Source of the DNA: Laetmonice hystrix
Lineage: Eukaryota
Assembly: GCA_965235115.1 (NCBI GenBank)
Contig: OZ249437.1
Span: 47,678,001-47,742,000, forward strand
Length of the DNA stretch: 64,000 nucleotides
Reading direction: 5' to 3'
Shown here: one piece after another, positions 6,496-61,333 of the stretch
Layout of the letters: each line of letters begins with the position of its first letter
Numbering within the stretch: the stretch's first letter is position 1
The notes under the pieces: model-generated
The model's input: the letters and a program-made list of their open reading frames with translations, nothing else
The model's database searches: none
Told to the model about the DNA's origin: nothing
Program-made: the position numbers and the translations under genes

Positions 6496-6662
6496 GTCGC
6501 CGCGTGTGTTGGGACTCTCGGCCACTGCCTGCCGGGTACGTTTGCGTTGTTCCCTCTTGGGGGAATCCTCCGCCTCCTGCGCCTTGGTCACGTGGGAGGG
6601 CGTGCTTGACGCTTCCTTCTCCCGGCCGCCTTTCCCTTTACCATGGCCGTGGCTTGGGGTTG
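6454..6662 (-). CDS. Terminal coding exon of an unidentified minus-strand gene (basic, S/T-P-rich, NLS-like tail)
   Basis: Minus-strand acceptor attattatttcAG (plus 6663-6664). 209 bp = 2 + 69 codons ending in TAG (plus cta 6454-6456). Reads TPSHGHGKGKGGREKEASSTPSHVTKAQEAEDSPKREQRKRTRQAVAESPNTRGDRDTPTPGKRARRT*. Confidence 0.6.
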
Positions 6663-17036: not shown

Positions 17037-17610
17037 GCGTAATGTACCGGACAACCAGTCGTACTACGTATCACGGTGCGTAATGTACTGGACAACCAGG
17101 CGTACTATGTCTGTATCACGGCGCGTAATGTACTGGACAACCAGGCGTACTATGTCTGTATCACGGCGCGTAATGTACTGGACAACCAGGCGTACTATGT
17201 CTGTATCACGGCGCGTAATGTACTGGACAACCAGGCGTACTATGTCTGTATCACGGCGCGTAATGTACTGGACAACCAGGCGTACTATGTCTGTATCACG
17301 GCGCGTAATGTACCGGACAACCAGGCCTACTGTGTCTGTATCACGGCGCGTAATGTACCGGACAACCAGGCGTACAATGTCTGTATCACGGCGCGTAATG
17401 TACCGGACAACCAGGCGTACAATGTCTCTATCAAGGAGCGTAATGTACCGGACAACCAGGCGTACTATGTCTGTATCACGGCGCGTAATGTACCGGACAA
17501 CCAGGCGTACAATGTCTCTATCAAGGAGCGTAATGTACCGGACAACCAGGCGTACTATGTCTGTATCACGGCGCGTAATGTACCGGACAACCAGGCCTAC
17601 TATGTCTGTA
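17037..17610. repeat. 45-bp minisatellite, ~13 copies
   Basis: Unit GCGTAATGTAC(T/C)GGACAACCAGGCGTACTATGTCTGTATCACGGC. Confidence 0.97.
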
Positions 17611-32219: not shown

Positions 32220-33092
32220 GACAAGTACGAACTGTTCCGGAATACTCCGGACTTCAGTCGCAAGGGTGTATACACAGAACGACAGTGCCGGACAAGACTC
32301 GAAGGGACTTTAGGGGATAAAGACTAGTCCGTTGTTGTCTTGATACGCTGTGTATACCGGGCTTTAGGACACGAGAAGCTAACCACAGAGTGTGCAGCAC
32401 AGCCCAGGTTCCGCACACTATTGAAAAAATGGAGGGTAGTTTTGCCGTTAAGACGATGGACTAATCCCAGGGAAAGTGTATTAAACTACTGCCTAGGTTT
32501 GTCACTGTTAATGCCAGTCAGGATATAGATGGCTAGGTAATCTCATGATCCCTAGTCACTCTTCTGGATTTCCCTTTTAGGACCAACGGGTTGGCCGTGC
32601 AAACACGATTTACCTTAACAGTTCCTGCGCACGGCTTAATACTGATCAACTCTTAGAGATTACATGCATCATGAATGAGCAAAACTTTCGGGAAACAAAA
32701 GTGGAACATCAGACCATTTGTTCACTATACAATCTGTGGCATTTCCACCAGTCATATTGTTCCATAGACACAGGCCTCATGGCTCACAACCACGTCTCTA
32801 ATTGGCATGTAATGAGACATTTCCCCCGATTTGCAGCGTCGACATGGATATATAAAAATAACACCGCTCGAGGGAGATTTGCATGACACCCATACAAAGG
32901 CTTGTAATGCCTATCCGACTTACTAGTTATACGACACTCGATCCTGCTTCCCACTTTTATTATTATACCGAGTCTACCTCTTTTCTTGGTTGTGGGGGGG
33001 GGGGGGCGGTGGATTTCGATGTCGCTTTATTAAATCATAGAACGTATAGCAGAAGCAAGGAGAGGGTGAGACGCAGTTAATTTTGAAACTGC

Positions 33093-33338
33093 AACGACCG
33101 TCGCTACGACCGTCGCTACGACCGTCGCTACGACCGTCGCTACGACCGTCGCTACGACCGTCGCTACGACCGTCGCGACGACCGTCGCTACGACCGTCGC
33201 TACGACCGTCGCTACGACCGTCGCTACGACCGTCGCTACGACCGTCGCTACGACCGTCGCGACGACCGTCGCTACGACCGTCGCTACGACCGTCGCTACG
33301 ACCGTCGCTACGACCGTCGCTACGACCGTCGCTACGAC
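33093..33338. repeat. 12-bp minisatellite (ACGACCGTCGCT)n, ~20 copies
   Basis: Directly visible. The variant GCGA occurs twice, 84 bp apart. Confidence 0.97.
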
Positions 33339-36300
33339 CAGGCCTTGTGCTCCCCAGCCAAACCCCCACAGTATTGAACACCCCAGGCCCCCTTACGATC
33401 GTGCTCCTCATCCACGTGTAATATCGGGTGCGAATCTCAAGATGAAGACACGCGACACGAGACACGATTCTAAATGGTACACTATTGTACCTACTCCGCA
33501 TACACACAATGTATACGTCAGCTTTATGCGATGCCTTCCCTAATGATGTGTTAGTGGCACGCAAATTCCAAAACAAAAATGAAGAGATGGGAACCTGTCA
33601 TGCAATGCCTGAAAGGTTCCCAGCTAACATTTCTGAACAGCATATATCTGACCTTTAAAAATTACGTGTAAATAGAATCAACTCGACTCCGTTGAACGAC
33701 GGCACGAGCTGAAGGTGAGTGATGAAGAGGTCTCCGACTGTTCCAACGGAATGCCAAACTCTGCCATATGGATGTGTCTCTGGCCTTCCACCAGGTTGCA
33801 TGACATCGCATGAACGGAAACTCGCTCCCTCTGCGTGTTTCAATAACTCAATCAATAAAGCACTTGGGCAATTCATCCCAAGGAGGAACACAAACGACCA
33901 TAATCGTGACGGAAACATGTATTTCTGACCTAGTTCAGTTACAGTCATGTAATCCCCTTTGCTCCCGAAATGCAGTTTTACCCGTCTTGATATCCACTGA
34001 CTTTGATCAGAAATGAGATTTCCGCAGAGTTAACCCACATACGACGTCATTGAAACACAACTCATGATTGGTTCAGAACGTTACAACTCCACAAAATCTA
34101 TGGTGGGTCTCGGGTAGGTCCCCAACCTATCACGGGTAACCGAACCTCGGCCGGGATTCGGCCTCAATGGGAGAAATACGATTATTCTACGCGATCACGT
34201 CACGGGGAATCAAACAATAGCTAGAGACAGAGTGCAGCCAGAACAGAATCAGGCATGATATCGATGGCACAACCAGATCGAGGTCCCTTAACCGCGTATA
34301 TTGTATGTAGATATGAATTAAGATCGGAGCAGAGACATTCATCATGACCATAATGTGAGTGTTTAATGTGGTTAACAGCTGAAGCTGCCAGTAGAAAACG
34401 TATGCTTTGCCACATTTCATGACTATACTCTTCCATTGTTACAAAGATAAAAAATGAGCCACTTTAAGAATGTTCCCGCCGCCTGAGTGCCGCGGTATGG
34501 TCAGGAGGTGAACATATCAGAAGTACTGTGGCCGAAAAGTACAAACATTCTCGGCTCACAGATTTCGATCCTCGGCTCACAGATTTCTGTACTCGCGTTT
34601 AATGTTTCTACTGGGCTCGCAGATTTCGCTACTCGAACCTGACTCAATATCACTATGAGACAGAAAGATGTGCCAAATACCTCAAATCATAGACATATTG
34701 CGGAAATAAACAAATAAAAGCAGCTTAAAGCTGATCTTCATGCAGAAAGACTTCACAAATTTACGAAGATCATACCTGAAACAATGTGGACGACTAAATA
34801 TCCATTATTTATTTCATAAATAAATAAAAAAAAAATTACATACATCAACTGTTTACCATTATAGGGACATTACCATTATAGAATGACCACAGTTTAAATG
34901 GATGTTACTCGGTGAATAAAAATCCAGGATGATTTTCTCTCCAAGTGAACTGTCGGTGGTGTGAAGGCAGCGTTTTCTACCCTCGAGACGTCTATTTGTG
35001 AAGCCACCATTGAATGTTTCCCTTCCCTTGCCCTGACGGTACACAGGGGAACCATGACTCCCGTTGTCTCAGACCTTCCCCTTCACACCTCGGCTGATGA
35101 CTACTGACGAATCTCCACGGCCACACACCCATAGTGTGTCTAGCTGCTGCCTGCCATGTTTGCTGGAATCTCCCTACAGTGCCCTGGACCAACTAAATTG
35201 ACAATATCTGTTAGGTTCTCTAAACAGGAAGGAACCGTCTTGTTGACAAGAGCCAGACAACGCTACCGTCTAGACTCCACCTCGCCGACACACATACCCA
35301 CTGGTAGAGGTATCGTCTGGTAGCTTTCCAAAAACACAACGGCAGGGTTTCCGCCAGAAAATCAGTTAGGGGGGATAACCCCCCCCCCCCCCTGTATGAA
35401 ATCCTACTGGGTGCTGTTCCCAGCCAAAACTGCTGCATAAATAGCTGTTAGTCACGTCTACAAGACAGTAAATCTTTGCCCGTCTGGTAGAGTCCAGGGG
35501 TACGCTCTGCCGGAAGATATCCCAAGGGTTCTACGAAGTAGTTGCATTTTGTTAGCTTGCTTGTAAAACTAGACTGACGTTAACACAGACGGTGAACAGA
35601 TTGTTGATTGTGTTTATCCGTGACAAATGTACGAGCTGGCCTAGGATGGACACCCAATATCCCAGCTGCCAGCTACATCTGCCCAGAGCCTCCTTCATTC
35701 AGTAACTCGTGCACTTACTCAGTCCTTACTCGTCCCAGTATCTAATAAGCAGCATCTTAATTCGTTCTCCTGCTAGTGACGCACGATGCAGTATCTCATT
35801 GGTTGACCTCCAGAGCGTTGTCAGACATTGGTAATATAGTTAGGTCATGGCCTTGCCCGCTCGTACATCGGGTTACGTACATCTTCCCCCAATCCTCCAT
35901 TGATCTCCACAACTCCCGACACCAAACTAACCCGCCAACTTTCAAGGTAGGCCCTAGCTCGTGGCGACTGGACTGGTTTAAACGTGATCATCAAGTCTGC
36001 CTCCTGGCTCCATGATTACTCTTTGATCACAAGTTCTAGCTATTTACCACGATGGTGCTTGGATTATATTTCTAAGTTTGTGCTATTTGGGGAGCCAATC
36101 ATCGATCTACTGTTGTTTTCTTTTCGCTAAGGTTGTTAAAACAATCCGAGGGGTACTGTGTGGAGATCTAGCTGAAGGATACATACTGATTACATTACAC
36201 CATTTCAGTTCGAATTATCCTTTAAATAAAGCTGTTTGAACCGCTATGATTAATGTTTGATGTGGCATTGATTCAAACGTAGCATACTGCCTTTACAAGT

Positions 36301-37652: not shown

Positions 37653-39077
37653 GTAAGTTTGAATTCCCCTTGATTTCTTTCAATGTCGTTACTATTGTGA
37701 GGCAATATTTCATTAAAAGTTTGATGAATGGGGGGGGGGGCTCCTTTTCTGAAAGCCTAGTCCTCACCAACCCAACCTGTTTGTACGGCTCTTTAAAAAT
37801 TCATGCATTGCCACAAATTCATCAATTCTAGTCATGCTCTCCTAAAAAGATGCCGTATTCGAATATCTATTTCAGAAGGCGCATTGAAGCGCATTCTAGA
37901 ATTCGTCCTGTTCAGAATAAAGTTAAACGTGCACTGGAAGTGAACTAGATTAAATTAGATTTACTTGTATTATGTGAGGAAGCCCATTCTATCCTCTTTG
38001 GTGTGAACAGAATCGAATTCTACGATACGCATTGTGTGGGCACTGTATGGTTGACAATGGTTAGATAGCATTATTTATCCACTGTTGAGTGGTTGAGCCA
38101 ATATCAACTTTCCCATCTGAACCTGCACAGTGCTAGAAGAACTCCAATAAATACGTTTTCGATGGAAGGGATATTTTAATCTGTTTAAAAATTACTTTTC
38201 CACACGAAAGACAAGGCCATCTGAAATAGGAAGGACTTGAGATATTGTTTCTCTTTAGATCGTTCAGATCAAATTTTACCGTGAACCCAACTGTACATGT
38301 CTGCTTTGCCGTCAATAAAATTGTTCGTGCAAAGAGTTCACCATAGCATATTGGTTCGAACCGTCCTTGTTTAAAAGGAGACGTGATATAAGTACAGACT
38401 ACACGCTAGGTCCAGCCATTGTTACTCTGTAAGGTGAGCCACGACCACTGCATAAAAAATCAACCAAACGGCTTCATATTCTCAGCACACTATTCAAGAC
38501 CCTTGAGAACATGAATAACAACCGTTGTACGTGAAGCGAAGAACCATAAAAGGTCTCGATTGTAAATGATAAAAAACCTCACATAGAGAAAGTGATATAG
38601 ATCCTCTACCTTTTATTACTGTCCTCTTATGGATTATCTTTAAATTGAATGATGCAAACAAAAGAAGACATCCATTCCGTTTGTGGAGGAGCGAGTTAAT
38701 ATGAGATAAACCATTTCGTGTCCATGACCTTATATTCATGATGACGGCAAGATATTCGTTTATTCTTTCGATGGGTTGAAAGAAAAACAAAATCGCCTTT
38801 TTTGCCAGAGTCATTCATCATCGGGACTCTGCCACTGTGACAATCACTTTTTACACTGCAAGAGATGAGGTAAAAGACGGCATGTCTTCATATTCACGGA
38901 ACACGGGAAAGCACACATTCTTTTTCTCACCTGAATGTGTAGACGATTCATAGAAAGGTGTACATAAAGCTAATAAGGAAAAGCATCGGGCAGCTTCTTC
39001 TCAAGACGAATTCTTGTCTTGTAATTCCTCTCTTTGTTCAAACTCAGATTTTATCTCTGACGTCTAACAAGCTGTCA

Positions 39078-40791
39078 GTGATATAACAAAGTGATTGGAT
39101 TATGCTGATATCTACTTGTTTCATTGTGATATAACAAAGTGATCGGATTCTGCTGATATCTACTTGTTTCATTGTGATATAACAAAGTGATTGGATTCTG
39201 CTGATATCTACTTGTTTCATTGTGATATAACAAAGTGATCGGATTCTGCTGATATCTACTTGTTTCATTGTGATATAACAAAGTGATTGGATTCTGCTGA
39301 TATCTACTTGTTTCATTGTGATATAACAAAGTGATCGGATTCTGCTGATATCTACTTGTTTCATTGTGATATAACAAAGTGATTGGATTCTGCTGATATC
39401 TACTTGTTTCATTGTGATATAACAAAGTGATTGGATTCTGCTGATATATACTTGTTTCATTGTGATATAACAAAGTGATTGGATTATGCTGATATCTACT
39501 TGTTTCATTGTGATATTACAAAGTGATCGGATTCTGCTGATATCTACTTGTTTCATTGTGATATAACAAAGTGATCGGATTCTGCTGATATCTACTTGTT
39601 TCATTGTGATATAACAAAGTGATTGGATTATGCTGATATCTACTTGTTTCATTGTGATATAACAAAGTGATTGGATTCTGCTGATATCTGCTTGTTTCAT
39701 TGTGATATAACAAAGTTATTGGATTCTGCTGATATCTACTTGTTTCATTGTGATATAACAAAGTGATTGGACTCTGCAGATATCTGCTTGTTTCATTGTG
39801 ATATAACAAAGTTATTGGATTCTGCTGATATCTACTTGTTTCATTGTGAGAGTGATTGGATTCTGCTGATATCTACTTGTTTCATTGTGATATAACAAAG
39901 GGATCGGATTCTGCTTATATCTACTTGTTTCATTGTGATATAACAAAGTGATTGGATTATGCTGATATCTACTTGTTTCATTGTGATATAACAAAGTGAT
40001 CGGATTCTGCTGATATCTACTTGTTTCATTGTGATATAACAAAGTGATTGGATTATGCTGATATCTACTTGTTTCATTGTGATATAACAAAGTGATTGGA
40101 TTCTGCTGATATCTGCTTGTTTCATTGTGATATAACAAAGTGATCGGATTCTGCTGATATCTACTTGTTTCATTGTGAGAGTGATTGGATTCTGCTGATA
40201 TCTACTTGTTTCATTGTGATATAACAAAGTGATTGGATTCTGCTGATATCTACTTGTTTCATTGTGATATAACAAAGGGATCGGATTCTGCTTATATCTA
40301 CTTGTTTCATTGTGATATAACAAAGTGATTGGATTATGCTGATATCTACTTGTTTCATTGTGATATAACAAAGTGATCGGATTCTGCTGATATCTACTTG
40401 TTTCATTGTGATATAACAAAGTGATTGGATTATGCTGATATCTACTTGTTTCATTGTGATATAACAAAGTGATTGGATTCTGCTGATATCTACTTGTTTC
40501 ATTGTGATATAACAAAGTGATTGGATTCTGCTGATATCTGCTTGTTTCATTGTGATATAACAAAGTGATTGCATTCTGCTGATATCTACTTGTTTCATTG
40601 TGATATAACAAAGTGATTGGATTCTGCTGATATCTACTTGTTTCATTGTGATATAACAAAGTGATTGGATTCTGCTGATATCTACTTGTTTCATTGTGAT
40701 ATAACAAATTGATTGGATTCTGCTGATATCTACTTGTTTCATTGTGATATAACAAATTGATTGAACTCTGCTGATATCTACTTGTTTCATT
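39078..40791. repeat. 48-bp minisatellite, ~36 copies
   Basis: Unit GTGATATAACAAAGTGATTGGATTCTGCTGATATCTACTTGTTTCATT. Two 41-bp deletion units at ~39842 and ~40171. Confidence 0.97.
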
Positions 40792-43700
40792 TGGTTTTAA
40801 ACTGTGCATAGACGGGAATGTTCTCAGGCCAAAATCTGCTGTCAGACCTCCTTCCATACCCGCCATTTGCTTCTTTCGGCGCTGGCCTGTTGCTGACGGA
40901 TTCTGTAACACCGACTACATTGGAGTCTCTACAGTCAAGAGGGCGACTGTGAGTCACAATCTGCCCGCAGGTGTTGTGTATGAACTGAGAGGAAAGAATC
41001 GTCGCCTGACAGCAGAAGCCACCCTGGTGCCAAAACACAGTGTTGTCAATGCTGAGCGGAAGCCACCGAGGCACCACGGCTTCCGCGCCCGCAGCCAACA
41101 TCTGGGATCGAACCACGTCCTTTCTTGTGGCAAGCACAGTGCCTTTGTCTCCCTCGTTTCGTCAATGTTTGACCAGTCTCTGACATATATGAAGAATAAT
41201 CCTTACGGTGACCATTTCCTCAGTATATGTTTAATTAGAAAGGGTGTTTTCATTAAGCCAAGGTAAGGACTGGCCATCTCTTTAACTGTTTACACAGACA
41301 GAATTAAATGGGACATTGTAACCATAAACGACAGCAAACAATACAATATTATGACGTTTCACATGCACTGATTCCCAAGTAAAATCCAAACCAGCTGGAT
41401 TTTTTTAAATGAGATCGTTCAGTCTGTCATGTGCCTGGCTTCGCCTGGACTGATGTTCGTTCTGAGACCCATGTCCGTAAACGAGCAGCAGAATGAAACC
41501 ATTTCTTTTATCCTTAACAAGATAACTTTCGTTAAATACGCCAATGGTACGAAAAGTTGACTATCCGCCCTCCTATCCTCCATTCTAAATACATCAAACA
41601 ACTATTCGCAATATTCAGATGAGATGAACTTTACAAAGTTATCTGACAACAGTACTGAAAAGCTGCAACACGCATGCAGCTCAGCAACATACATAAATAC
41701 GAAAGTCAATGTGACGGGAAAGACATCAAAGAATATTCCTATGTGCTCAGTATTTGATTAGGCAAGGTACAATTAGCTTCACTACTGGAATTTTACCAAA
41801 ATAGCTTAATAGTTCGGAATATCAAATCCTTCCATTGGAAATTATTTTAATGCGCAATAACACGACTACAACTATGTTCCCACTCGACTGTCCTCACACC
41901 ACCGTCGCGCGCCATTCACATAAAACTTCGCAAGGGGACATTGTGACAAGGTCATTATCGTACTTTCAGGGTCTCCGTATTCTTACCATTACATGTTACA
42001 TATTTCGCTTATCACTCACAAAAAATCATGATAAAAATAAATCCTCGCGTGTGTATCGCACCTATCTGACTTTGATATCCTACAGAAAATCTCCTTGGTG
42101 AAGGTCTACAAGAAAAAGGCAAATAATCACATTTAGAAAAAAAACGTTCAGACAAGAGATATACCTCGCCACACTTATATCCAAGGAAAGATTCCTAGAT
42201 GTTATTCCCTACCTCTAAGCCACGTGTTATATCTTTATGTCTCAGTCTGACAAGCCAAGCACAAATTTGACAACAGGTTTTTGAACGTGTGTTCTTCAAC
42301 TCTGTCACAATGTTCCTGAAAATTTCTGGGGGAAAAAACAAACTGAAAAGGCTTTGAAAATGAGCCGGTTCATTTGTAATGGACATCTACACGACATGTA
42401 CACTTCAGCATTGGCTGTCATTACCCCTAGCTTTTATAATCGTAGTTCACTTTCTTTCTCACACTGATCTTTCAAGATATTTAGAAAAATAAACTTTTAC
42501 TGAAAGGCTTACATTATCTCGTAATGTGAAGTAAATATTCTATACTTATAAATATCACCCTAGAATATCACCCTGAAATATGAAAACCAAGATATTGATT
42601 GTTTCCAGACATTGTAATCTATTATATTATTTAAACATATAATTTAAAAGTGTTTTGCTTATTTCAAATTGCGTATAAAATATCCATTATCTCCCCTTTT
42701 CTGCATTTCTCACTTGCCACATTATCCATCACACTAGTCCTCTTTATGAATATTGGAGAGAAACTACAGAAACAGTATTTCAAGTTCTTTTTTCAACTTT
42801 GGTGCTCTTGTTGGCAGTCTGTAGCAACTGCAGCGGAAGATGACGGAAGATATTCGTGTAAAGAAGCGGGTACATGTTGGGAGACAAATGGCTGGTTTAC
42901 CACAGACTGGCATCAAAGCATTCTGCCACCGCAACTTTGAAGTACCTTTCGCAGCAAACGAAACAACTCTCCAAACATGCAATCGGCATGTGCCAGTGTA
43001 CCTGCCAAAAGAATCCTGCACTGCTTGGGTAGATACAGGCACCATCAATAAAGCCCGGACCTGACAGTGGGTGCTATTAAAGAAAACAATGCACCGCTTG
43101 AAACGAGAGGACTTGATTGACTTCCTGACACCATCACGGCCGGCCCGTCTGAGGAAGTGTTGCCAACGATGATGAATGACTGACCGGTGTCAAGTCGAGT
43201 GGATACAATCTGCTTAATGCTGTGCATGATTTCAAAAAACTATCCTTCATATAACACCCGCAATATAAACGTCACGCTTCATCGGAGAGTGCATGAGTGA
43301 TGTTAATAAAGTGGCGACCAGTTAGGACAAATTTCTATTTCCTAGACTCTGAACTACAAGGGATAAATGTGGTCTTTACGGCCCTATCCACTCGCAGGCC
43401 GACCCGGCCGGTGCCAACATGTTCACACGGTATCAGTTTTATGGTAGGCCACAGTAAAGGCTTCAGAACTCTTATTTATGTCGACACTCATTGTAATGGA
43501 CACAACCACGCCCATGCATTTGGCAATGGGCGGGTCCGCCCTTCCCAGTGGGTCGTATATATTGGGTGGGAATAAAATATACTTTGGTGGACTCTATAAA
43601 TATTGTAGAACAGAGTTCATGTTCTTAGAGAATCCGTAAGAACTATTTTTGTAAGCTATTTAAAGTATTAAAGTGTATCCAGCCATATCAAACAATGGCC

Positions 43701-49673: not shown

Positions 49674-50171
49674 CAGGGCAGGGTTAGGGGCAGGGTATAG
49701 GGTTAGGGGCAGGGTATGGGGTTAGGGGCAGGAGAGGGTTAGTGACAGGGCAGGGTTAGGGACAGGGCAGGGTATGTGGTTAGGGGCAGGGTATAGGGTT
49801 AGGGGCAGGGTTAGGGGCAGGGTATGTGGTTAGGGGCAGGGTTAGGGGGCAGGGTTAGGGGGCAGGGTATGGGGTTAGGGGCAGGGTTAGGGCAGGGTAT
49901 GGGGTTATGGGCAGGGTTAGGGCAGGGTATAGGGTTAGGGGCAGGGCATGGGGTTAGGGGCAGGAGAGGGCTAGTGACAGGGCAGGGTTAGGGACAGGGC
50001 AGGGTATGTGGTTTAAGGGCAGGGTATAGGGTTAGGGGCAGGGTTAGGGGCAGGGTTAGGGGCAGGGTTAGGGGTTAGGGGCAGGGTTAGGGGCAGGGTT
50101 AGGGCAGGGTTAGGGCAGGGTATGGGGTTTTGGGCAGGGTTAGGGCAGGGTTAGGGCAGGGTAGGGTTAGG
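49674..50171. repeat. G-rich, telomere-like degenerate array (GGGTTAGGGGCA-based)
   Basis: Many TTAGGG-containing units interleaved with GGGCA/GGGTAT. A ~130-bp block is duplicated at period ~232 (markers at 49731 and 49963). Confidence 0.9.
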
Positions 50172-52819
50172 AGCAGCAGGGGTAGAGACATGGTTTTCAG
50201 GGAGGTCTAGGGACCAAGGTTACGGGGGTTGTTACCACTGGATTTCGTGGCGATAATACGACGGAGAGATCTACATCGACGTTGAGGGTGGAACTGTCAG
50301 GAATAACAAAGAATCAAAACGAGTGCGCATGATAACTATCAAATATCTAACATTAAACGTTATCATGATGACCACACTGACCACCTGACTCATTCCTATC
50401 TCCCAACTGAGAGAAATGTGCATGGAGAGAACAAGTAGGAGCCATATCCACACCGACTCTCATTTATATTCTCACTAACCGTTTCCTTTAACTCACACAA
50501 GAAAAGAATGGCTCCGAACGATGCTGCGATAATTGCTAAATGGATCTGAAGTAACAGCTCATCACCGATGTACGATAACTAGCTTATATTGCACATCCTT
50601 GGAAAAGCAGCCTTCTGTATAGATGGAAGGGTGATGGTGATTTCCCTGAGGGAAACGCCTTCACGTAACCTTCCTCAGTAGAAGGCTGGGAGTATGTGAC
50701 CTGCTAGACCGACGAATTGGCCCAAGATGAAACCAAATACAAAGCAGGCGGAAGTTATTGGCCGAGCTCGTAAAGCAGCAGTCGGCTGCACTGTCGTGAT
50801 AACTTCTTTATACTGACAGCCACAAGATGAGATAAGAGTACTTTAACTTGATTCATTGGCAGCATCATACTCTTTCAACTCAGCCGACCAATACGTAATT
50901 GGTATATTACTTTCTTTCTGCCATGCCCCTTTGAAGAACCTAACAGATACAGCAGGTTCGACTTTCTCGTTCAACTGTTAATGTCTCCGATCTATTCAGA
51001 CATGAAGTTCTCCGAGTGTTTTTACTAATTGTGTTTATCGAATTAGTTACGGTAACTTTACACTCTTGCTGTGGCTATACATTATTATAGACAGAGATTC
51101 GGAGATTATCGGCGATTTATAGATAAAGTGAGCACCTAATGATCTCACTCGCTCACACAACTTTACAATACAGTCAATATGTCAATTGGTCAGTACGAAT
51201 TCCGGTGACCCAATTTTCGCTACCTTCATGCTGAGAACATTTCTACTTCAAACTAATTCAGTCTATTTGAGATGATGAAGACGATAGGATTTACACTTGG
51301 ACACGATTCCTCACTGGTTTCGAATAGGAGGCAAGGATTTGTTTACATTCGACATACTACACAAAGTGCTACCCGATCAGCCTTTGATAAACCAGACGGG
51401 AACACTGGCCGCAACAATGTTGTATAGTGTCTCCAAAAATGAATTCACGGGGATATAATACATTGGTTAAACCTTGCACCATGAAATTATGAATATCTGC
51501 AAAAGACCAGTATGGAAAAATATGGAAAATACCCATTCCTCGATTATCACTGGGCTCCCGAGTCCCAAATCCCAAAAGTCGACACCCACAGGACTTCATC
51601 GGATCAAAACAGAACCCCTTCAGGTATAGAACATGGAACATGGACAAGTCTGAAAGGAGAGGTGGCCCCTGTACCGTGAGTTCAATCTCCATTAGTTGGT
51701 TCACTCTATGTCCGCTTCCGCCGTGCTTGGTGTGATGTAGACACAGACAGGTGCGACAGCGGCGACTGCCTGTGGCAGTTACAGGTAAATTGAAATTCGA
51801 GATGTCCAAGGACGGCACATCCATCGCATTATGGGACGGCCAATTTAAGGATGTGAAATTGGAATCATGCAGCGGCGAAACAACTTTGTGAAGTGAAAAT
51901 TTGATTTTTTTTTCTGTACTCCTATACGTTCTGAACTTTGCCGAAGTTACATTGCACAACAATCCTTTGTAAAAGAGTGGTTTAGAATTAACTCACTGTA
52001 TGAGTGAATAATAAATAACAAGTTGCTGTATGAACCAATAAAGTCCCGAGCAAAAAGCTCTTTCATGAAATCGACCAAATGGACAGATTGGAAACTAATA
52101 TTGGTAATGATAGTGTTTTTTTGTTTTGGGGGGATAAAATGTCCAATAATTATTCCAAACGCACGTAATTCTTAACAACATCCGGCGACCCTCATTAAAG
52201 CATAATGTACTCCTAGAGACCGGGTCCAATCTTGCTTCATTTTTTTCGAGTGACATCAGTCTCAACCTCGTGCGCTCAGGTAATATCCACTAACAAGATC
52301 ATATTTTATGCTAAAACGCGTTTGTGGCACTCGTTCAGTTTCCATGATGTCACGAAGCATAGTCTGTTAGACCTATATCTGCATGGAAAATTTGAAAGGA
52401 ATTGAACGGTCTACGCCTTATGCCACAGAAGCTTGGACAGCAAGACAGCGTGAGGTGCTGTCGGTATGTGTGAATGATAGATAAGGCAAGGCCACCCTCA
52501 CCAAGTGCTGCCTAGAACAATAGATCTATGACAAGAACATTCTGCCAGCTTGGGTTAGACGTCTGGGTGGTGGAGCTGTGACTGTGACCGAACCTGAGGG
52601 AGCCAGATACCGTCACAGGGCCCTCCCGTCACAGGGCATGTCACAGGGCCCTCCCGTCACAGGGCATGTCACAGGGCCCTCCCGCCACACAGCCCGCCAC
52701 AGAGCCGCCGCCTGGGAAAACCTGCACGTAAATCATCGACCACCACACTCAATTACCGCTACTCACCATAACCTGCGGAACACCTTCAAGCTAGTGTGGC
52801 AACCTTCCTGACGGGAAAA

Positions 52820-53222
52820 AGCTCTTCGTGCTGCGCAGGAACTTTTTACCTTGACCTGTTTAAGATATTATTTCTGACGTCTTAGGATTGGCTCCAGCAA
52901 GCTCTTCGTGCTGCACAGAAACTTTTTAACTTTATCTTTATAAGATATTATTTCTGACGTCTTAGGATTGGCTCCAGCAAGCTCTTCGTGCTGCACAGAA
53001 ACTTTTTAACTCTATCTTTTTAAGATATTATTTCTGACGTCTTAGGATTGGCTCCAGCAAGCTCTTCGTGCTGCACAGAAACTTTTTACCTTGACCTGTT
53101 TAAGATATTATTTCTATTATTTCTGACGTCTTAGGATTGGCTCCAGCAAGCTCTTCGTGCTGCACAGAAACTTTTTAACTTTATCTTTTTAAGATATTAT
53201 TTCTGACGTCTTAGGATTGGCT
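52820..53222. repeat. 80-bp minisatellite, ~5 copies
   Basis: GCTCTTCGTGCTGC at 52821, 52901, 52981, 53061 and 53150 (the preceding unit has a 9-bp duplication). Confidence 0.95.
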
Positions 53223-54896: not shown

Positions 54897-55945
54897 GTCA
54901 CCTTGCTGCACGTTATTATGACCATAGCTGTGTGACTTAAGATTGGTTCCTTAGATACGGGTGTCACCCTGCTGCACGTTATTATGACCATAGCTGTGTG
55001 ACTTACGATTAGTTCTTTAGATACGGGTGTCACCCTGCTGCACGTTTTTATGACCATAGCTGTGTGACTTACGATTGGTTCTTCAGATACGGGTGTCACC
55101 CTGCTGCACGTCATTATGACCATAGCTGTGTGACTTAAGATTGGTTCCTTAGATACGGGTGTCACCCTGCTGCACGTTATTATGACCATAGCTGTGTGAC
55201 TTACGATTAGTTCTTTAGATACGGGTGTCACCCTGCTGCACGTTTTTATGACCATAGCTGTGTGACTTACGATTGGTTCTTTAGATACGGGTGTCACCCT
55301 GCTGCACGTCATTATGACCATAGCTGTGTGACTTAAGATTGGTTCCTTAGATACGGGTGTCACCCTGCTGCACGTTATTATGACCATAGCTGTGTGACTT
55401 AAGATTGGTTCTTTAGATACGGGTGTCACCCTGCTGCACGTTATTATGACCATAGCTGTGTGACTTACGATTGGTTCTTTAGATACGGGTGTCACCCTGC
55501 TGCACGTTATTATGACCATAGCTGTGTGACTTACGATTGGTTCTTTAGATACTGGTGTCACCCTGCTGCACGTTATTATGACCATAGCTGTGTGACTTAA
55601 GATTGGTTCCTTAGATACGGGTGTCACCCTGCTGCACGTTATTATAACCATAGCTGTGTGACTTAAGATTGGTTCCTTAGATACGGGTGTCACCCTGCTG
55701 CACGTTATTATGACCATAGCTGTGTAACTTAAGATTGGTTCCTTAGATACGGGTGTGTCACCCAGCTGCACGTTATTATGACCATAGCTGTGTGACTTAA
55801 GATTGGTTCCTTAGATACGGGTGTCACCCTGCTGCACGTTATTATGACCATAGCTGTGTGACTTAAGATTGGTTCCTTAGATACGGGGTCACCATACTGC
55901 ACGTTATTATGACCATAGCTGTGTGACTTACGATTAGTTCTTATA
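54897..55945. repeat. 66-bp minisatellite, ~16 copies
   Basis: Unit GTGTCACCCTGCTGCACGTTATTATGACCATAGCTGTGTGACTTAAGATTGGTTCCTTAGATACGG (54961, 55027...). Variants repeat at 198 bp. Confidence 0.97.
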
Positions 55946-56000: not shown

Positions 56001-56396
56001 TGTATATGTCGTGGCCCAGATCCCAATCTGGCCCAGTTGCCAATTGGTCCGGACCAGATGTCAATTGGGATCTGGTCCGGCCCAGATACCAATTGGGATC
56101 TGGTCCGGACCAGTTGCCAACTGGACCGGACCAGATCACAATTGACATCTGGGCTGGCCTGGATGCCAATTGGGATCTGGGCCGGACCAATTGGAAACTG
56201 GACCGGACCAGATCACAATTGGCATCTGGGCTGGCCTGGATGCCAATCGAGGTTTTCAGTCATAAGATTGGAATCTGGTCCGGACCAGTTGGCAACTGGT
56301 CCAGACGAAATAATAATTTCAATCTGGTCCAGCCCAGATCCCAATCCAATGACTCTTGGTCCAGATCCAAATCCTGGTTCCTCATCATGGATTTAA
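56001..56396 (+). repeat. Left terminal inverted repeat
   Basis: Reverse complement of 60938-61333 with only a few mismatches seen. Contains repeated CTGGTCCGGACCAG and CCAATTGG palindromes. Confidence 0.95.
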
Positions 56397-57243
56397 AAAC
56401 GTCGGAAGGTAGGGGCCCTCCCACAAAAAAATTTTGAATTTAAAAGGCAAAGAAACGCAATCCCAGCCTCTGGAGATAGAACTTGTAAAGCTTCTCAAAG
56501 CACTAAAGGCCTAGCCTATGTACCAATAACATGCGCTGGGGTCCTCCCCAGAATATTTTTGAATTTAGAAGGCCAAAAACGCCATTTCTTGACCAAAATA
56601 AGGGGGGTCCAGGGGGTCTGGACACGCCCCTAAGGGGGGAACATGGGTCGGAGGGGTCGGTCTGAAGGTGGACACCCTGCAGACACGAGCTGGACCCACT
56701 ATCCCCTATCTGATCGCTGTCAGGGGGGACCGGATCCCCCTGTCAGGGGGGATATGGGTCCAGGGGGTGGTTCATTCCAACACCCCCTGGCTACGGGCCA
56801 TTTTTTGTCAATGTGAAATAAAATAAATCTAAAAAGAAATATGATTGTGAGAATGTTTTTCTTCTGTATGGAAAGGAGTCTGGACATTAATTAATCGCTC
56901 TGTTGTCTTCAGTAGTCAGAAGTGTTGTGCTGACCTTGCACACACCCAGACTTCTGCCGAGCCGTTAGTAACACTTTCCCATTGTTTCCAAGATCTAAGA
57001 GACTACCCTACTTTGTAGTGACTATTGTTCCTTCCAAGCTGCCAGAATCGGGGCCTTTGCTGAAGGCCGGGTGTGAGAATCTTGGGCTGGGTTGCGGCTG
57101 ACACTCAGTGACGAGTGAATTTGACTGGGAGGTGTAAAGAGGCTGTGAAAAACAGGTACGGCCAGAGAGTCGCAGCTTGAGGACATCAAATAAACATTAA
57201 AGAGGAAGGTGTGACACACTAGGGCCTAAATTAGAGTACATGT

Positions 57244-57300
57244 GATTGGCTACTAGGCCTGGTAGGGTATATAAGGGGTGCAGTTTCATAAGCAGTTCAT
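57244..57300 (+). promoter_or_regulatory. Putative transposase promoter
   Basis: Reverse CCAAT (ATTGG ~57245), TATATAAG at 57268-57275 and Inr-like CAGTT at 57293, just upstream of the ATG at 57315. Confidence 0.55.
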
Positions 57301-57314
57301 TACACATTGTCGCA

Positions 57315-57516
57315 ATGGAGCAGAAGGAGCAGTTTTACGAGTTGCTGGATACCCACATGGCCACACTCTGTGACCAGAAGAGAGACAAGTACGTCATCAC
57401 CCAAGCGACGTATGCTAAGGCCATCTCAGCATTGAATTTGGCTAAGGGTACCAAGTGCCCTGATGGTTCATATTTTAAGTTTTGGTGCAACAACAGTTTC
57501 CAGACCCAGGACATAG
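57315..57516 (+). CDS. Transposase exon 1
   Basis: ATG 57315; MEQKEQFYELLDTH...FKFWCNNSFQTQDI; donor G|GTGAGT. Confidence 0.8.
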
Positions 57517-60378
57517 GTGAGTATTGGACAGGTATAATCATTTAAATGCTATTAGATCTAAAAGGTTTCTGGCTGGTAAATTTGAGACGCCGTTGGCATA
57601 TTGAACGTCTTGGTATTGCAATTTCAAACTTTACTACAAGAAAGTGAACTTATTTTAAACCAGCAACAGTTTCTGAACCATTCATAATTTCACGGATATA
57701 AGACATTATGCCATCAGTGTGTACCACATGTCTTCCCGCGTCCTTGTTCATTATTTACTGTGTGCTTGACATGATCTTTCTTTTCGTGCAGGTACCGAAA
57801 CCATTCTTTACTGTAAGAAGACGAACTTGCCTGTCACCACCAAAGAAGATCTGTACAGTGTGATCCATCAGAGTCACCAACGTGTGGGCCACTGCGGCCG
57901 TACAAAAACATTTGATGAAGTCAAGAACAACTACAGCTGGGTCCCCCGAAATGCAGTGGCGTTCTACCTGCAGACATGCCAGACCTGCAAGATTCGCGCG
58001 CCACTAAAGCAGCCCATATCCGCCAAGCCCATCATCTCCCTTGGTTTTCTCACCAGAGTCCAAGTTGACCTAATAGACATGACAAGCCGTCCAGATGGTG
58101 AGAATAAATGGATTTTACATGCTAGAGACCATTTCTCGAAATACTCATGGACCTTCGCCCTGACGTCCAAAAGAGCCACTGAGGTACAGTTCATCTCTTT
58201 ACATATTCTATAGTTCTTGCTTTCTGTGTGTATTTTTTTGCCTGCCAGATTTCCGCATTCTGTATTTTCCGTACAAATGGCTAATAATATTTATTATTTA
58301 CCTTTATCATCATGTTCTTAATTTGTTTTAGGTTGCTGAGAAACTTGTGACCCTCTTTACAATGTTTGGCCCTCCAAGAATACTGCAGTCAGACAACGGG
58401 AGAGAATTTGTTGCAGCAGTTATCTCAGAGCTGACCGACCTGTGGCCGGGACTACTAATAGTCCATGGGCGACCCAGACACCCTCAGAGCCAAGGCTGCG
58501 TAGAGCGTGGTATGAATTATTTTAGTAAGACATAAAGTAATACGAATGAAATTCATGATGACAACGAACAGTAATTTGTGCATAGTTCAATATACTCTCC
58601 ACTGTCATTATTTCATTCCAATGTGTCGTTTTTTATATTTCCAGGTAATGGAGACTTGCAACTAAGACTAGGAAAGTGGCTTGAGGAACAGGGTGGTACC
58701 TGGTCAACAGCTCTGCAGTTTGTTACCCATGCTATGAATACCTCAACAGCATCAGCCACCAAGAAGACACCATATGAAGTGGTCTTTGGGCAGAAGCCAC
58801 GTGCGGACTTTTTCTTGCTGCAGCAGCTCTCACAACAGGTGAGTTGGTACTATTGACTATTTGGTTCTATTGTAAGTATATTACTTTTTTTGATGTTCAT
58901 AATATATTTTGATGTATTAGGCACTCAATACTGATTTGTCATTTGAGCAGGGACCATTGCTGGAAGAGACCATAGACCCTGCACTATTTGAAACTGAGGC
59001 CGATCAACAAGAAGGACCCCACAGAATTGTAAGTAATTATGTCCAATTAAAGAGAATAACTGATCTTTTCTATACAGAAAATATATTATTCAGTAGTTGT
59101 ATATATGTATATTATCGAGACAGAGAGCGACAGAGTCAAATAATGCAAATGCATTTTTTACCTGTCACAATGTACTCGAACTACTCAAGTTAACACTGCT
59201 TCATAACCATATTTCAGGAAGAGCCCCATGCATCTGCAGCGACTAATCTACCCCAGATGTCCACAGCCTCAGTCTCTGGCAGCGACTGTTCCAGCACCAG
59301 CAGCAGACTGGCAGACTTCCTGACAGAGGAGGCACCATCCACTTCACAACCAAAATCTGTCAAGCGCAGCCGTAGCTACCACATGCTACACCAAGGAAAC
59401 GCCATAGCAGAGGGTGTCAAGATCACAAATCGCAGCACTCTCCATGGTTCATCTTTTGACCAGACCACACACACTGTTATGCAGGTCATCAGCGTCATCG
59501 ACGAGTCGTTTATTCCAAGAGAACACAACCCTCAAGAAGAGCCAATCCAAGAAGACCAGTATGTCCTGTGGCCAATCGACTCCCTCCTAGACATCGACAC
59601 AGACCCTCACTCAAAACATGCCAAAGTCAGACAGCAGGCAACTGTATCCTATTTGAAAACAGGTACGTTTATATAATAGGATAATAATATTAATGTACAC
59701 TGCCGTTACAATAATTCTTCTTTGTTTAAATGTTATAATATACGATTGCTCAGGTGTTGTTTTTAATTCAAGTATAATAATATATGTCTTCATTTACAGC
59801 TAGGCGTCAGAACCAACAGCACAAGCAACTGAGCCAAGAGAAGGAGTTTTCCATTGGGGATACTGTTGGTATCCGTATCAACAATGCTGATCGTACCAAC
59901 ACTGGTAAGTTTTTGTACTGTGAGATAAAACGTTGTACGAGTCATGGTACGTCAGAAATACGTAAATGCGATTGAGCCCGGGACTTGGTATCACTAAGTC
60001 TAATAAAACATATTGTTACTTTTGCATGTATTTGCAGATGCCCGAATACTGCCGTGTCGAATACTGCACAAGGAGCCAAGTTCCCGTACCCCCTTCAAAG
60101 TGTATTCGGCCACCGGAGTCATCACAACTTCATTTTCGGCAGCAGACCTGACGGACATGAAGTCTGTTCATTTTCCTTCCCTGGCGAAGGCGGTCCCCAG
60201 CGATCTTCCAGAGGTGTCCCTCATCCAGGCCAGCAGGGACCAAACCCGATACCGAAAGGCATCCAAGTGCGCCTGCCGTGGGGGCTGCACTACAAACAAG
60301 TGTTGCTGCAGAAAAGGTGGATTTACATGTGCCACCAAGTGCCACCCAACCAACCAGGCGTGCCAAAACAGGTGCTAA
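57315..60378 (+). CDS. Ginger-type transposase/integrase, 8 exons, 644 aa: join(57315-57516,57792-58183,58332-58509,58645-58838,58951-59028,59218-59662,59800-59904,60038-60378)
   Basis: All 7 introns are GT-AG and phases close to 1935 nt with no internal stop. HHCC finger (H..VGH...CQTC), D (QVDLID), D (SDNGREF), E (SQGCVERGN), TPYEVVFG, GDTVGIRI..ADRTN, and C-terminal CACRGGCTTNKCCCRKGGFTCATKCH. Confidence 0.9.
57792..58183 (+). CDS. Transposase exon 2 (HHCC zinc finger, first catalytic D)
   Basis: HQSHQRVGHCGRTKT...CQTC; RVQVDLIDM...RDHFSKYSW. Confidence 0.92.
58332..58509 (+). CDS. Transposase exon 3 (second D and catalytic E)
   Basis: FGPPRILQSDNGREF...HGRPRHPQSQGCVER. Confidence 0.93.
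58645..58838 (+). CDS. Transposase exon 4
   Basis: NGDLQLRLGKW...AMNTS...TKKTPYEVVFGQKP. Confidence 0.92.
58951..59028 (+). CDS. Transposase exon 5 (acidic linker)
   Basis: 78 bp, phase 0-0, AG/GTAAGT sites; GPLLEETIDPALFETEADQQEGPHRI. Confidence 0.75.
59218..59662 (+). CDS. Transposase exon 6 (Ser-rich linker plus inserted globular module)
   Basis: 445-bp open frame between atttcAG and G|GTACG. Confidence 0.8.
59800..59904 (+). CDS. Transposase exon 7
   Basis: RRQNQQHKQLSQEKEFSIGDTVGIRINNADRTNT; catttacAG and G|GTAAGT sites. Confidence 0.85.
60038..60378 (+). CDS. Transposase exon 8 (C-terminal CXC domain)
   Basis: ARILPCRIL...KCACRGGCTTNKCCCRKGGFTCATKCHPTNQACQNRC*. Confidence 0.88.
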
Positions 60379-60668
60379 GAATGTATAATTCTAGATTGTA
60401 ATAACCTTTTTGAGATGGTCTTTCTTATGTAATTTTATTTGTGTCATTAGTTCACTTTAATTTGTACAGTGTATTTTGAATAATATATGCATTCACTATT
60501 TCATAAAACCTCTTGTTCATTTAAAACAACTGGCAGTAGGGAGAGGTCAGTAGTTATTCGATGAATTATTACTTTTGTAATTTGTATCTATTCGAATGTA
60601 ACTATTTGCCATTACTAAGATATTACTACCCGGTATATGTCTATAGTATAAAGTGAACATGTATTTTT

Positions 60669-60674
60669 AATAAA
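60669..60674 (+). terminator. Candidate polyadenylation signal of the transposase transcript
   Basis: AATAAA ~290 bp after the stop and inside the right TIR boundary. The region is AT-rich, so this is not unique. Confidence 0.4.
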
Positions 60675-60937
60675 CATTTGTATTGACCTGAGGTGGTTTT
60701 GGTTAAAATGTGATGGAGTAATGTGACAATGTGCTGTGTAGGAAATAAAATAGTCCATGGAATGTCCTTGGTATAAAACGAGCATGTATTTTTCAAAAAC
60801 CTTTGAGGAGGGGGTTGCAATGCGATGGAGTGTTATTTAATTAGGTATTTTCTATTTATTTATTTTAACTAGGCCTATTTTCGTTTACAATGCCATGTGT
60901 ATCTGAAATAAAATACATAAAAAGAAACTCGATTTTA

Positions 60938-61333
60938 TTAAATCCATGATGAGGAACCAGGATTTGGATCTGGACCAAGAGTCATTGGATTGGGATCTGG
61001 GCTGGACCAGATTGAAATTATTATTTCGTCTGGACCAGTTGCCAACTGGTCCGGACCAGATTCCAATCTTATGACTGAAAACCTCGATTGGCATCCAGGC
61101 CAGCCCAGATGCCAATTGTGATCTGGTCCGGTCCAGTTTCCAATTGGTCCGGCCCAGATCCCAATTGGCATCCAGGCCAGCCCAGATGTCAATTGTGATC
61201 TGGTCCGGTCCAGTTGGCAACTGGTCCGGACTAGATCCCAATTGGTATCTGGGCCGGACCAGATCCCAATTGGGATCTGGTCCGGACCAATTGGCAACTG
61301 GGCCAGATTGGGATCTGGGCCACGACACATACA
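60938..61333 (-). repeat. Right terminal inverted repeat
   Basis: Mirror of 56001-56396, same length. Confidence 0.95.

What the first reader, a model, noticed from the sequence alone, without database searches (positions are those of the whole stretch)
59377..59590. En/Spm TNP1-like module inserted inside the Ginger transposase
Seen: between the DDE core and the GDTVGIRI segment, exon 6 encodes GNAIAEGVKITNRSTLHGSSFDQTTHTVMQVISVIDESF...QYVLWPIDSL, bounded by low-complexity linkers. From memory this fits the pattern VA.G...T(I/L)HG...V.V..V.D...F(V/I).WP of the small TNP1/EN/SPM domain of CACTA accessory proteins. Inference: a domain swapped between two unrelated transposon superfamilies, added as a near-whole-exon cassette. 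I do not know this architecture for Ginger elements.
Basis: inference. Interest (0 to 1): 0.75.

Follow-up and report, generated by a model that had tools for sequence, protein, structure and literature searches.

The report
Extra beta-barrel domain in Ginger2 transposase
The flagged stretch is a real, conserved, folded domain of about 80 residues that one branch of Ginger2 "integrase-type" DNA transposons carries between the catalytic core and the C-terminal block. No test available here links it to the plant TNP1/En-Spm domain, so it is a modest new variant of a known transposase rather than a domain swap between superfamilies.

Summary
Exon 6 (59218-59664, +) of an intact eight-exon Ginger2-type transposase gene encodes the quoted peptide. 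The gene lies in a 5.3-kb element with 98%-identical terminal inverted repeats of about 400 nt.

- **Conserved and constrained.** The segment recurs in Ginger2/KRBA2-like proteins of fish, amphioxus and gastropods (E down to 1e-52). Against a Stegastes copy its dN/dS is 0.11, versus 0.42 for the adjacent linker.
- **Folded.** With a 31-sequence alignment it models as a small SH3-like beta-barrel followed by a helix (core pLDDT 85-92).
- **A lineage-specific gain.** Seventy rotifer, fungal and bivalve relatives share every other block but lack it. On a DDE-core tree all carriers fall in one clade.
- **TNP1 reading not supported.** None of 31 members matches PF03017, or any other recurrent Pfam family, at E<=10. 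A scan of 1.84 billion proteins finds the module only inside Ginger2 proteins. Foldseek returns only generic small barrels.
- **Exon-cassette reading not supported.** Exon 6 also encodes linker and a helix shared with module-less relatives, and in Littorina the module sits inside a 417-codon exon.

Function is inferred: an acidic protein-binding accessory domain.

The parts
56007..56404 (.). Left terminal inverted repeat. It starts TGTCG (the TGTNR pattern) and is built of roughly 28-nt and 77-nt units containing the palindromes CCAATTGG and GGTCCGGACC.
   Evidence: The inverted arms 56001-56404 and 60930-61333 are 404 nt and 98% complementary. Unit structure is and the terminus.
60930..61327 (.). 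Right terminal inverted repeat, ending ...CGACA. The flanks are TATA (56003-56006) and CATA (61328-61331), a putative 4-bp target-site duplication with one mismatch.
   Evidence: The 4-bp duplication and the RTATAY target preference of Ginger2 are from PMC2836005.
57315..57518 (+). Exon 1: start codon and the N-terminal region shared with Ginger2/KRBA2-like proteins.
   Evidence: Frame translation and tblastn of P0001, P0043 and P0038. Boundaries are inferred.
57791..58186 (+). Exon 2: H2C2 zinc-binding domain and the first part of the DDE core (the DLID aspartate).
   Evidence: PF17921 at E 2.2e-9; 72% identity to P0001 and P0043.
58332..58509 (+). Exon 3: DDE core containing the SDNGREF aspartate and the VERG glutamate.
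   Evidence: rve PF00665 at E 0.0027, below the gathering score for this exon alone. Alignment to rve-annotated homologues supports it.
58645..58838 (+). Exon 4: the end of the catalytic core (NGDLQ...KTPYEVVFGQ).
58951..59028 (+). Exon 5: acidic low-complexity linker.
   Evidence: unalignable linker columns. Boundaries are inferred from GT-AG sites and from P0001.
59218..59664 (+). Exon 6: S/T/A-rich linker, then the module, then the conserved helix.
59356..59598 (+). The module: a K-R-x-R lead followed by an acidic small beta-barrel of about 75 residues. Modelled strands lie at about 59374-59592.
   Evidence: Alignments A2 and A5. The AlphaFold2 model has mean pLDDT 78.7 and 85-92 in the core. 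dN/dS is 0.107. Net charge is about -6.5.
59614..59661 (+). Conserved helix (H..(V)R..A...YLK) that module-less Ginger2 relatives also have.
   Evidence: Modelled as a helix, residues 96-111 of the model. Rotifer and other module-less relatives match only this part of the module HMM.
59800..59904 (+). Exon 7: start of the conserved C-terminal block (GDTVGIRI..DRTNT). The 3' end is ambiguous: a GC donor after 59904 or a GT donor near 59944.
   Evidence: inference.
60038..60378 (+). Exon 8: the rest of the C-terminal block (LPCRIL...), the Cys-rich CxCxGxC...CxC...C...KCH tail (60268-60375) and the stop codon.
   Evidence: No Pfam hit at E<=10.

Best explanation
Window 56007-61327 is an intact, probably recently active Ginger2-type cut-and-paste transposon. 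Its spliced transposase has, in order:
- an N-terminal region;
- an H2C2 zinc-binding domain;
- the DDE integrase core;
- a disordered linker;
- the flagged module;
- a helix;
- a conserved C-terminal block;
- a Cys-rich tail.

The module is an independently folding, acidic small beta-barrel of about 80 residues with an SH3-like topology, preceded by a K-R-x-R basic lead. One Ginger2 sublineage gained it once, within the variable linker between core and C-terminal block. That sublineage is now found in teleosts, amphioxus and gastropods, and the module has since been kept under purifying selection.

It has no detectable relative outside these transposases, so its source is unknown. It may have arisen de novo from the linker or been captured and diverged beyond recognition.

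Shown here: its existence, conservation, fold class, position, restriction to one lineage, and selective constraint.

Inferred only: because the barrel is acidic and not nucleic-acid-like, it most likely works as a protein-binding accessory domain. It would contact either another transposase subunit or domain during synaptic-complex assembly, or a basic host or chromatin partner that tethers or targets integration, by analogy with chromodomains of chromoviral integrases. The basic lead may act as a nuclear localisation signal.
For: **Element.** The inverted repeats are 404 nt and 98% complementary, with TGTCG termini and TATA/CATA flanks. These match the Ginger2 traits given in PMC2836005.

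**Gene.** H2C2 and rve hits. All exons are open, the boundaries have GT-AG sites except an ambiguous exon 7 donor, and they align to full-length homologues.

**Module conservation.** 32 clusters at E<=1e-3, of which 2 are spurious; the best is Stegastes partitus at 65% identity.

**Fold.** With the 31-sequence alignment the model has mean pLDDT 78.7 and a five-strand barrel at 85-92, followed by a helix. The best Foldseek neighbours are SH3-like barrels: KapB, KOW domains of ribosomal proteins, Mtr4 and Spt5, CAP-Gly and PWWP.

**Lineage restriction.**
- Rotifer and Rhizophagus proteins align over the N-terminus, H2C2, DDE core, helix, C-terminal block and Cys tail, with only linker where the module would be.
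- The module HMM hits 47 of the 147 fetched proteins. The others match only the helix.
- Core-to-C-terminal-block spacing has a median of 214 residues in 13 carriers and 124 in 70 non-carriers.
- On the DDE-core tree all 16 scorable carriers sit in one clade (SH-aLRT 89). The only non-carrier inside that clade, P0105, is a truncated model that lacks the C-terminal block as well.

**Constraint.** dN/dS between the window and the Stegastes copy is 0.107 for the module and 0.416 for the linker.

**Charge.** The barrel has a median net charge of -6.5 and a pI of about 5.1. K and R of the lead are present in 17 and 16 of 20 sequences.
Against: - The function is not tested. No ligand, partner or phenotype is known.
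- Foldseek gives no match at E<=1e-3 and TM-scores of only 0.3-0.4, so even the fold class rests on topology and on weak neighbours.
- The direction of change (gain, not loss) depends on a midpoint root and on an SH-aLRT 89 branch from a quick tree.
- The tree was built from the best 120 of 507 hits to a module-bearing query plus the hits of the big search, so sampling is biased towards carriers and their near kin.
Its nearest relatives P0001 and P0043 stand in for it.
- dS is near saturation (about 1.4), so the dN/dS values are rough.
Confidence: 0.6

Rival explanations
1. One reading: the module is a TNP1/En-Spm (Pfam PF03017, Transposase_23) domain of CACTA accessory proteins that a Ginger2 transposase acquired, so a domain is shared between two unrelated transposon superfamilies.
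For: Only the motif resemblance recalled from memory: VA.G, then HG, then V.V..V.D, then FV.W(P), in that order. The family consensus does keep VA.G, HG, V..V.D and QFV.W. The module is also a lineage-specific addition, which a capture would produce.
Against: - hmmscan against Pfam-A at E<=10 gives no PF03017 hit for the window segment or for any of 31 family members. No family is hit by more than one member.
- phmmer over 1.84 billion proteins of all lengths returns only Ginger2 proteins and fragments, plus two spurious bacterial repeat proteins that fail the module HMM.
- There is no second copy of the module and no CACTA-type gene near it in the window.
- The element has TGTCG ends and a 4-bp TATA-type duplication rather than CACTA ends.
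- In the text I read, PF03017 is listed only as a marker of the CMC (CACTA) superfamily (PMC5751038).
Confidence: 0.1
2. The module is ancestral to this Ginger2 group and was lost several times, in the rotifer, fungal and bivalve lineages, rather than inserted once.
For: The tree is rooted only at its midpoint, and the key branch has SH-aLRT 89 without bootstrap. Linkers are deletion-prone. The helix just after the module is shared by all.
Against: This needs at least three independent clean losses against one gain on the tree. All 70 non-carriers that have the C-terminal block show only short, unalignable low-complexity linker at the site, with no relic of the module even with filters off at E<=10.
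Confidence: 0.12
3. The module binds DNA and recognises the short palindromic repeat units that fill the long terminal inverted repeats. This would be analogous to TNPA binding the subterminal repeats of En/Spm.
For: The terminal inverted repeats of the window element and of the Littorina relative are arrays of short palindromic units. Some SH3-like and KOW barrels bind nucleic acids (established knowledge).
Against: Module-less relatives have the same repeat design: about 250 nt of 30-nt palindromic units in a rotifer and 132 nt in Rhizophagus. The module is therefore not needed for it. The barrel is acidic (net charge about -6.5).
Confidence: 0.1
4. The segment is not a domain, only a chance-conserved or disordered linker stretch, or an artefact of gene prediction.
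For: A single-sequence AlphaFold2 run gave a mean pLDDT of 38. There is no Pfam family.
Against: With the alignment, core pLDDT is 85-92. There are 15 clusters at E<=1e-10 across three animal phyla. dN/dS is 0.107 against 0.416 in the true linker. The module is encoded within one open exon here, in Stegastes and in Littorina.
Confidence: 0.03

Closest known systems
Ginger2/TDD DNA transposons (Bao, Kapitonov & Jurka 2010, PMC2836005)
   Same: Terminal inverted repeats with TGTNR termini, a 4-bp AT-rich TATA-type duplication, a transposase with an H2C2 finger and an integrase-type DDE core, and introns in the transposase gene.
   Different: The inverted repeats are longer (about 400 nt versus the 45-297 nt tabulated). 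The transposase carries an extra beta-barrel module of about 80 residues between the core and the C-terminal block. That paper does not describe the module, and most Ginger2 relatives sampled here lack it.
KRBA2- and SCAND3-type domesticated Ginger2 integrases (Llorens et al. 2012, PMC3575427) and database proteins named 'KRAB-A domain-containing protein 2-like'
   Same: The same integrase core. The nearest database homologues of the window protein carry these names.
   Different: The window copy lies inside an element with near-identical inverted repeats, so it is a transposon gene and not a domesticated host gene. No KRAB or SCAN domain is found. I did not search mammalian KRBA2 for the module.
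TNP1/En-Spm domain (Pfam PF03017, Transposase_23) of CACTA/CMC elements
   Same: A small domain in a transposon-encoded protein. The motif order (VA.G ... HG ... V.V..V ...
   Different: No HMM match at E<=10 for any of 31 members. The host superfamily, element ends and taxa all differ. No shared relatives turn up in a scan of 1.84 billion proteins.
Chromodomain of chromoviral (Ty3/Gypsy) integrases
   Same: An extra small beta-barrel added C-terminal to an integrase-type DDE core. There it tethers integration to chromatin, so it is a functional analogy for a lineage-specific accessory barrel.
   Different: No chromodomain match was found. The position is before, not after, the C-terminal block. 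No binding data exist for the Ginger2 module.
SH3-like small beta-barrels (KOW, Tudor/PWWP, CAP-Gly, KapB)
   Same: Predicted five-strand barrel topology. These are the top structural neighbours.
   Different: All matches have E>=0.08 against the PDB and TM 0.3-0.4. There is a conserved 21-residue insert (D..F.P...NPF.EP) between strands 4 and 5, and no family signature motifs.

Membership tests
Ginger2/TDD transposon | Transposase with an integrase-type H2C2 zinc-binding domain | tested here: met
   PF17921 at E 2.2e-9, 37.8 bits against a cut-off of 25.5, in exon 2.
Ginger2/TDD transposon | Integrase-type (rve) DDE catalytic core | tested here: met
   The rve tail scores E 0.0027 on exon 3 alone, below the gathering score because the core is split over exons. 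Exons 2-4 are 60-72% identical to proteins annotated PF00665. The D, D and E positions are present (and reading).
Ginger2/TDD transposon | Terminal inverted repeats with TGTNR termini | tested here: met
   404-nt arms at 98% complementarity; the ends are TGTCG and CGACA.
Ginger2/TDD transposon | 4-bp target-site duplication in an RTATAY target | tested here: inconclusive
   The flanks are G-TATA and CATA-C, which match the target pattern with one mismatch between the two copies. Only one insertion was examined.
Ginger2/TDD transposon | Clusters with Ginger2 rather than Ginger1 or Gypsy integrases | tested here: inconclusive
   The nearest homologues are KRBA2-like and Ginger2-type proteins, including Littorina saxatilis, a species with a described Ginger2. 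No tree with Ginger1 or Gypsy outgroups was built.
TNP1/En-Spm domain (PF03017) | Significant match to the Pfam PF03017 profile | tested here: not met
   No hit at E<=10 for the window segment or any of 31 homologues. HMMER's filters may drop hits above about E 0.1.
TNP1/En-Spm domain (PF03017) | Remote homology (profile-profile) or shared fold with TNP1 proteins | not testable with these tools
   No Pfam HMM library for hhsearch, no AlphaFold DB, and no tool-supplied TNP1 sequence were available. The PDB and BFVD searches gave only generic barrels.
TNP1/En-Spm domain (PF03017) | Encoded by a CACTA/CMC element (CACTA termini, Transposase_21-type transposase) | tested here: not met
   The element termini are TGTCG. 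The only transposase domains found are H2C2 and rve.
SH3-like small beta-barrel fold | Five-stranded, highly bent antiparallel barrel with significant structural neighbours | tested here: inconclusive
   The model has five main strands at pLDDT 85-92. Top neighbours are SH3-like barrels with probability up to 0.98, but E>=0.08 against the PDB and TM 0.3-0.4.
Tandem duplicate of the transposase's own C-terminal block | Profile-profile similarity between the module and the GDxVG...LPCKV block | tested here: not met
   hhalign of A5 against A4 gives probability 0.2% with 1 aligned column.

The most novel reading that the evidence does not exclude
The module is a very diverged relative of the plant CACTA TNP1-type accessory domain, or of another transposon or host reader domain, that an animal Ginger2 lineage captured. 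In that case a small barrel domain would have moved between unrelated transposon superfamilies and kingdoms and would now steer Ginger2 integration through a host chromatin partner.
Probability: 0.1. Interest if true: 0.6.

Novelty: new variant of a known kind. Interest (0 to 1): 0.3.

Why it matters
Ginger2 transposases are the closest cut-and-paste kin of retroviral and retrotransposon integrases, and they gave rise to the host genes KRBA2 and SCAND3. How they choose targets and assemble on their long, repeat-filled ends is unknown.

A lineage-specific, strongly constrained accessory barrel in the linker between core and C-terminal block is a concrete handle on that question. It can be deleted, swapped or used as bait. 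It also marks a sublineage with a patchy distribution (teleosts, amphioxus, gastropods) that may be useful for tracing horizontal transfer.

It also defines a protein family that Pfam does not yet cover. It does not change the picture of transposon superfamilies unless the remote TNP1 link is later shown.

Tried and rejected
- **Pfam scan of each exon at E<=10.** Exons 1, 4, 5, 6, 7 and 8 gave nothing.
- **Word-index search with exon 6.** No hit, because only proteins of 82-260 residues were eligible.
- **Single-sequence AlphaFold2 of exon 6.** Unusable, pLDDT 38.
- **PDB sequence-profile search with A2.** Only E 0.66-1.6 noise.
- **Foldseek against BFVD.** Nothing at E<=1e-3.
- **Module as a duplicate of the C-terminal block.** Rejected by hhalign.
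- **Module linked to repeat-filled terminal inverted repeats.** Rejected, because module-less rotifer and Rhizophagus elements have the same design.
- **The 2,029- and 2,083-residue hits P0023 and P0030 as non-Ginger carriers.** Rejected. They are bacterial repeat proteins that match through a short TLHG-type repeat and score at most 2.8 bits on the module HMM.
- **P0105 as a natural module-deletion copy.** Rejected. It is a truncated model without the C-terminal block.
- **Rfam scan of the window.** No match.
- **Literature search for PF03017.** It gave only its assignment to the CMC/CACTA superfamily.
Full report
**1. Observation**

Window 59218-59664 (+) is an open exon with an AG acceptor and a GT donor.

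The exon is the sixth of an eight-exon gene. Exon 2 carries an integrase H2C2 domain (PF17921, E 2e-9). Exon 3 carries the end of the rve core (E 0.003). Exon 7 holds the GDTVGIRI block, and exon 8 ends in a Cys-rich tail. The window has no N runs, and a tblastn of exon 6 against the window finds only itself.

I searched each exon separately by reference. Full-length comparisons use database homologues instead.

**2. Context**

The gene sits between inverted arms 56001-56404 and 60930-61333, which are 404 nt long and 98% complementary. The element proper runs from TGTCG at 56007 to CGACA at 61327 (5,321 bp). It is flanked by TATA and CATA in a G-TATA / CATA-C context.

TGTNR termini, a 4-bp duplication and an RTATAY target are the traits Bao et al. 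give for metazoan Ginger2 elements (PMC2836005). Near-identical arms and open exons point to a young, possibly active copy.

The arms are arrays of roughly 28-nt and 77-nt units with short palindromes.

**3. The module is real and conserved**

Pfam gave nothing for exon 6 at E<=10, and the word-index search was blank within its length limits. I therefore ran the exhaustive phmmer search over 1.84 billion representative proteins. It returned 32 clusters at E<=1e-3 and 15 at E<=1e-10, the best at 1.5e-52.

Apart from two spurious hits, every hit is a Ginger2/KRBA2-like integrase protein or a fragment of one. Named sources are Stegastes partitus, Sphaeramia orbicularis, Branchiostoma lanceolatum, Littorina saxatilis and Haliotis rubra. 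The two large outliers are bacterial repeat proteins that fail the module HMM.

The 31-sequence alignment gives this consensus:

KR.R.Y.LLH....VA.G........HG...N..T..V..V..V.D..F.P...NPF.EPL..GQFV.W, followed by TPH.K.R..A...YLK.

Between the window and the Stegastes copy, dN/dS is 0.107 for the module and 0.416 for the linker in the same exon. dS is near saturation, so these figures are rough.

**4. Fold**

A single-sequence AlphaFold2 run failed (pLDDT 38). With the alignment the model reaches mean pLDDT 78.7 and 85-92 across the core. It shows five main strands forming a small barrel, a well-packed conserved 21-residue insert between the last two strands, and a C-terminal helix.

Foldseek against the PDB and BFVD finds nothing at E<=1e-3. 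The best neighbours are SH3-like barrels: KapB, KOW domains of ribosomal proteins, Mtr4 and Spt5, CAP-Gly and PWWP, with TM-scores of 0.3-0.4. A profile search of PDB sequences is blank.

The barrel is acidic, with a median net charge of -6.5 and a pI of about 5.1. It is preceded by a conserved K-R-x-R lead.

**5. It is a lineage-specific addition**

A search with the 513-residue homologue P0006 gave 507 relatives, of which the best 120 were fetched.

- In a full-length alignment, rotifer and Rhizophagus proteins share the N-terminal region, H2C2, DDE core, helix, GDxVG...DRTNTD...LPCKV block and Cys-rich tail. Where the module would be they have only short, unalignable linker.
- With filters off, the module HMM hits 47 of 147 proteins. 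The rest match only its helix part.
- Among proteins that have both the core and the C-terminal block, the spacing between them has a median of 214 residues in 13 carriers and 124 in 70 non-carriers.
- On a tree built from DDE-core columns only, all 16 scorable carriers fall in one clade (SH-aLRT 89), sister to a module-less rotifer clade. Fungal and bivalve module-less lineages lie outside.
- The one non-carrier inside the clade, P0105, also lacks the C-terminal block, so it is a truncated model.

One gain is the most parsimonious reading. It depends on a midpoint root and on a sample biased towards relatives of a carrier.

**6. The TNP1 claim**

- None of the 31 members matches PF03017 at E<=10, and no Pfam family is hit by more than one member.
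- No protein outside Ginger2 carries the module.
- The element is not a CACTA element. In the text I read, PF03017 is listed only as a marker of the CMC superfamily.

By Pfam's own criterion the module is therefore not a member. I could not run HHpred against Pfam or Foldseek against AlphaFold models of TNP1 proteins, and no tool supplied a TNP1 sequence. A very remote relationship remains untested, and I put it at about 0.1.

**7. The exon-cassette claim**

Exon 6 encodes about 46 residues of linker before the module. After it, the exon encodes the helix that module-less relatives also have.

The Stegastes copy shares the fish exon layout. In Littorina, the linker, module, helix, C-terminal block and tail are all encoded in one 417-codon exon. 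The module boundaries therefore do not coincide with exon boundaries, and the introns vary between lineages.

**8. Other origins and functions tested**

- The module is not a duplicate of the C-terminal block (hhalign probability 0.2%).
- It does not go with the repeat-filled inverted repeats. The Littorina carrier has 244-nt arms made of palindromic units, but so do a module-less rotifer element (about 250 nt) and a Rhizophagus element (132 nt).
- Together with the negative charge, this argues against a role in binding the terminal repeats.

My working model is inference only: a protein-binding accessory barrel, used either for self-association in the synaptic complex or to bind a basic host or chromatin partner, with the basic lead as a possible nuclear localisation signal.

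**9. Comparison and verdict**

The element is a member of Ginger2. The transposase is a new variant of that kind, with an extra domain that has no Pfam family and is not described in the Ginger papers I read.

Its proposed origin and mode of acquisition are not supported. Interest is modest: 0.3.

Noticed in passing
window 56007-56404 and 60930-61327; L002 3307-3550 / 6790-7033; L003 3663-3909 / 6239-6683; L004 3703-3834 / 6386-6517: In all four Ginger2 elements examined (fish, gastropod, rotifer, Glomeromycota fungus) the long terminal inverted repeats are arrays of short palindromic units. The unit sequence differs in each. These look like multiple transposase-binding sites and occur whether or not the module is present.
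   Followed up: partly
window 60268-60375 (+): The Cys-rich tail CxCxGxC....CxC......C...KCH at the transposase C-terminus is conserved from fish to rotifers and Rhizophagus, yet has no Pfam hit at E<=10. It is probably a zinc-binding module of unknown role.
   Followed up: partly
window 59904-59944 (+): The exon 7 donor is ambiguous. A GC donor after 59904 would give DRTNT-D-ARILPC, as in all relatives. The GT donor near 59944 would add about 14 residues. This is inference only.
   Followed up: no
window 54897-55940: A 66-bp minisatellite (15.8 copies, 95% matches) ends about 65 bp from the left end of the transposon. Degenerate units seem to continue up to the insertion point.
   Followed up: no
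window 50013-50176: An interstitial tract of degenerate telomere-like repeats (TTAGGG and variants).
   Followed up: no
window 994-1494 (+): An open exon encoding WD40 repeats (PF00400, E 6e-12). From memory it resembles the last exon of an ERCC8-type gene, which I did not verify. It is the only clear host-gene exon I noticed.
   Followed up: partly
window 5811-6742, 17035-17639, 33083-33576, 39044-40911, 52819-53222: Several further minisatellite or tandem-repeat arrays produce long spurious ORFs on both strands. The window is repeat-rich.
   Followed up: no
L001 6001-6399 (Stegastes partitus gene model P0001): The annotated N-terminus of the Stegastes homologue appears to be translated from inverted-repeat DNA. 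Its residues 10-65 match the window's terminal inverted repeats in both orientations, and its C-terminus reads into the intron after the exon 6 equivalent. The database model is therefore partly wrong. That element lies inside an intron of a receptor tyrosine kinase gene on the opposite strand.
   Followed up: partly
proteins P0033/P0034 (Branchiostoma), P0035/P0040 (Littorina), P0039 (Haliotis), P0001 (Stegastes), P0043 (Sphaeramia): Module-bearing Ginger2 copies occur in teleosts, amphioxus and gastropods at 45-70% protein identity. This patchy distribution would fit horizontal transfer. Llorens et al. 2012 reported no Ginger2 transposons in vertebrates, so these fish copies extend that picture.
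   Followed up: no
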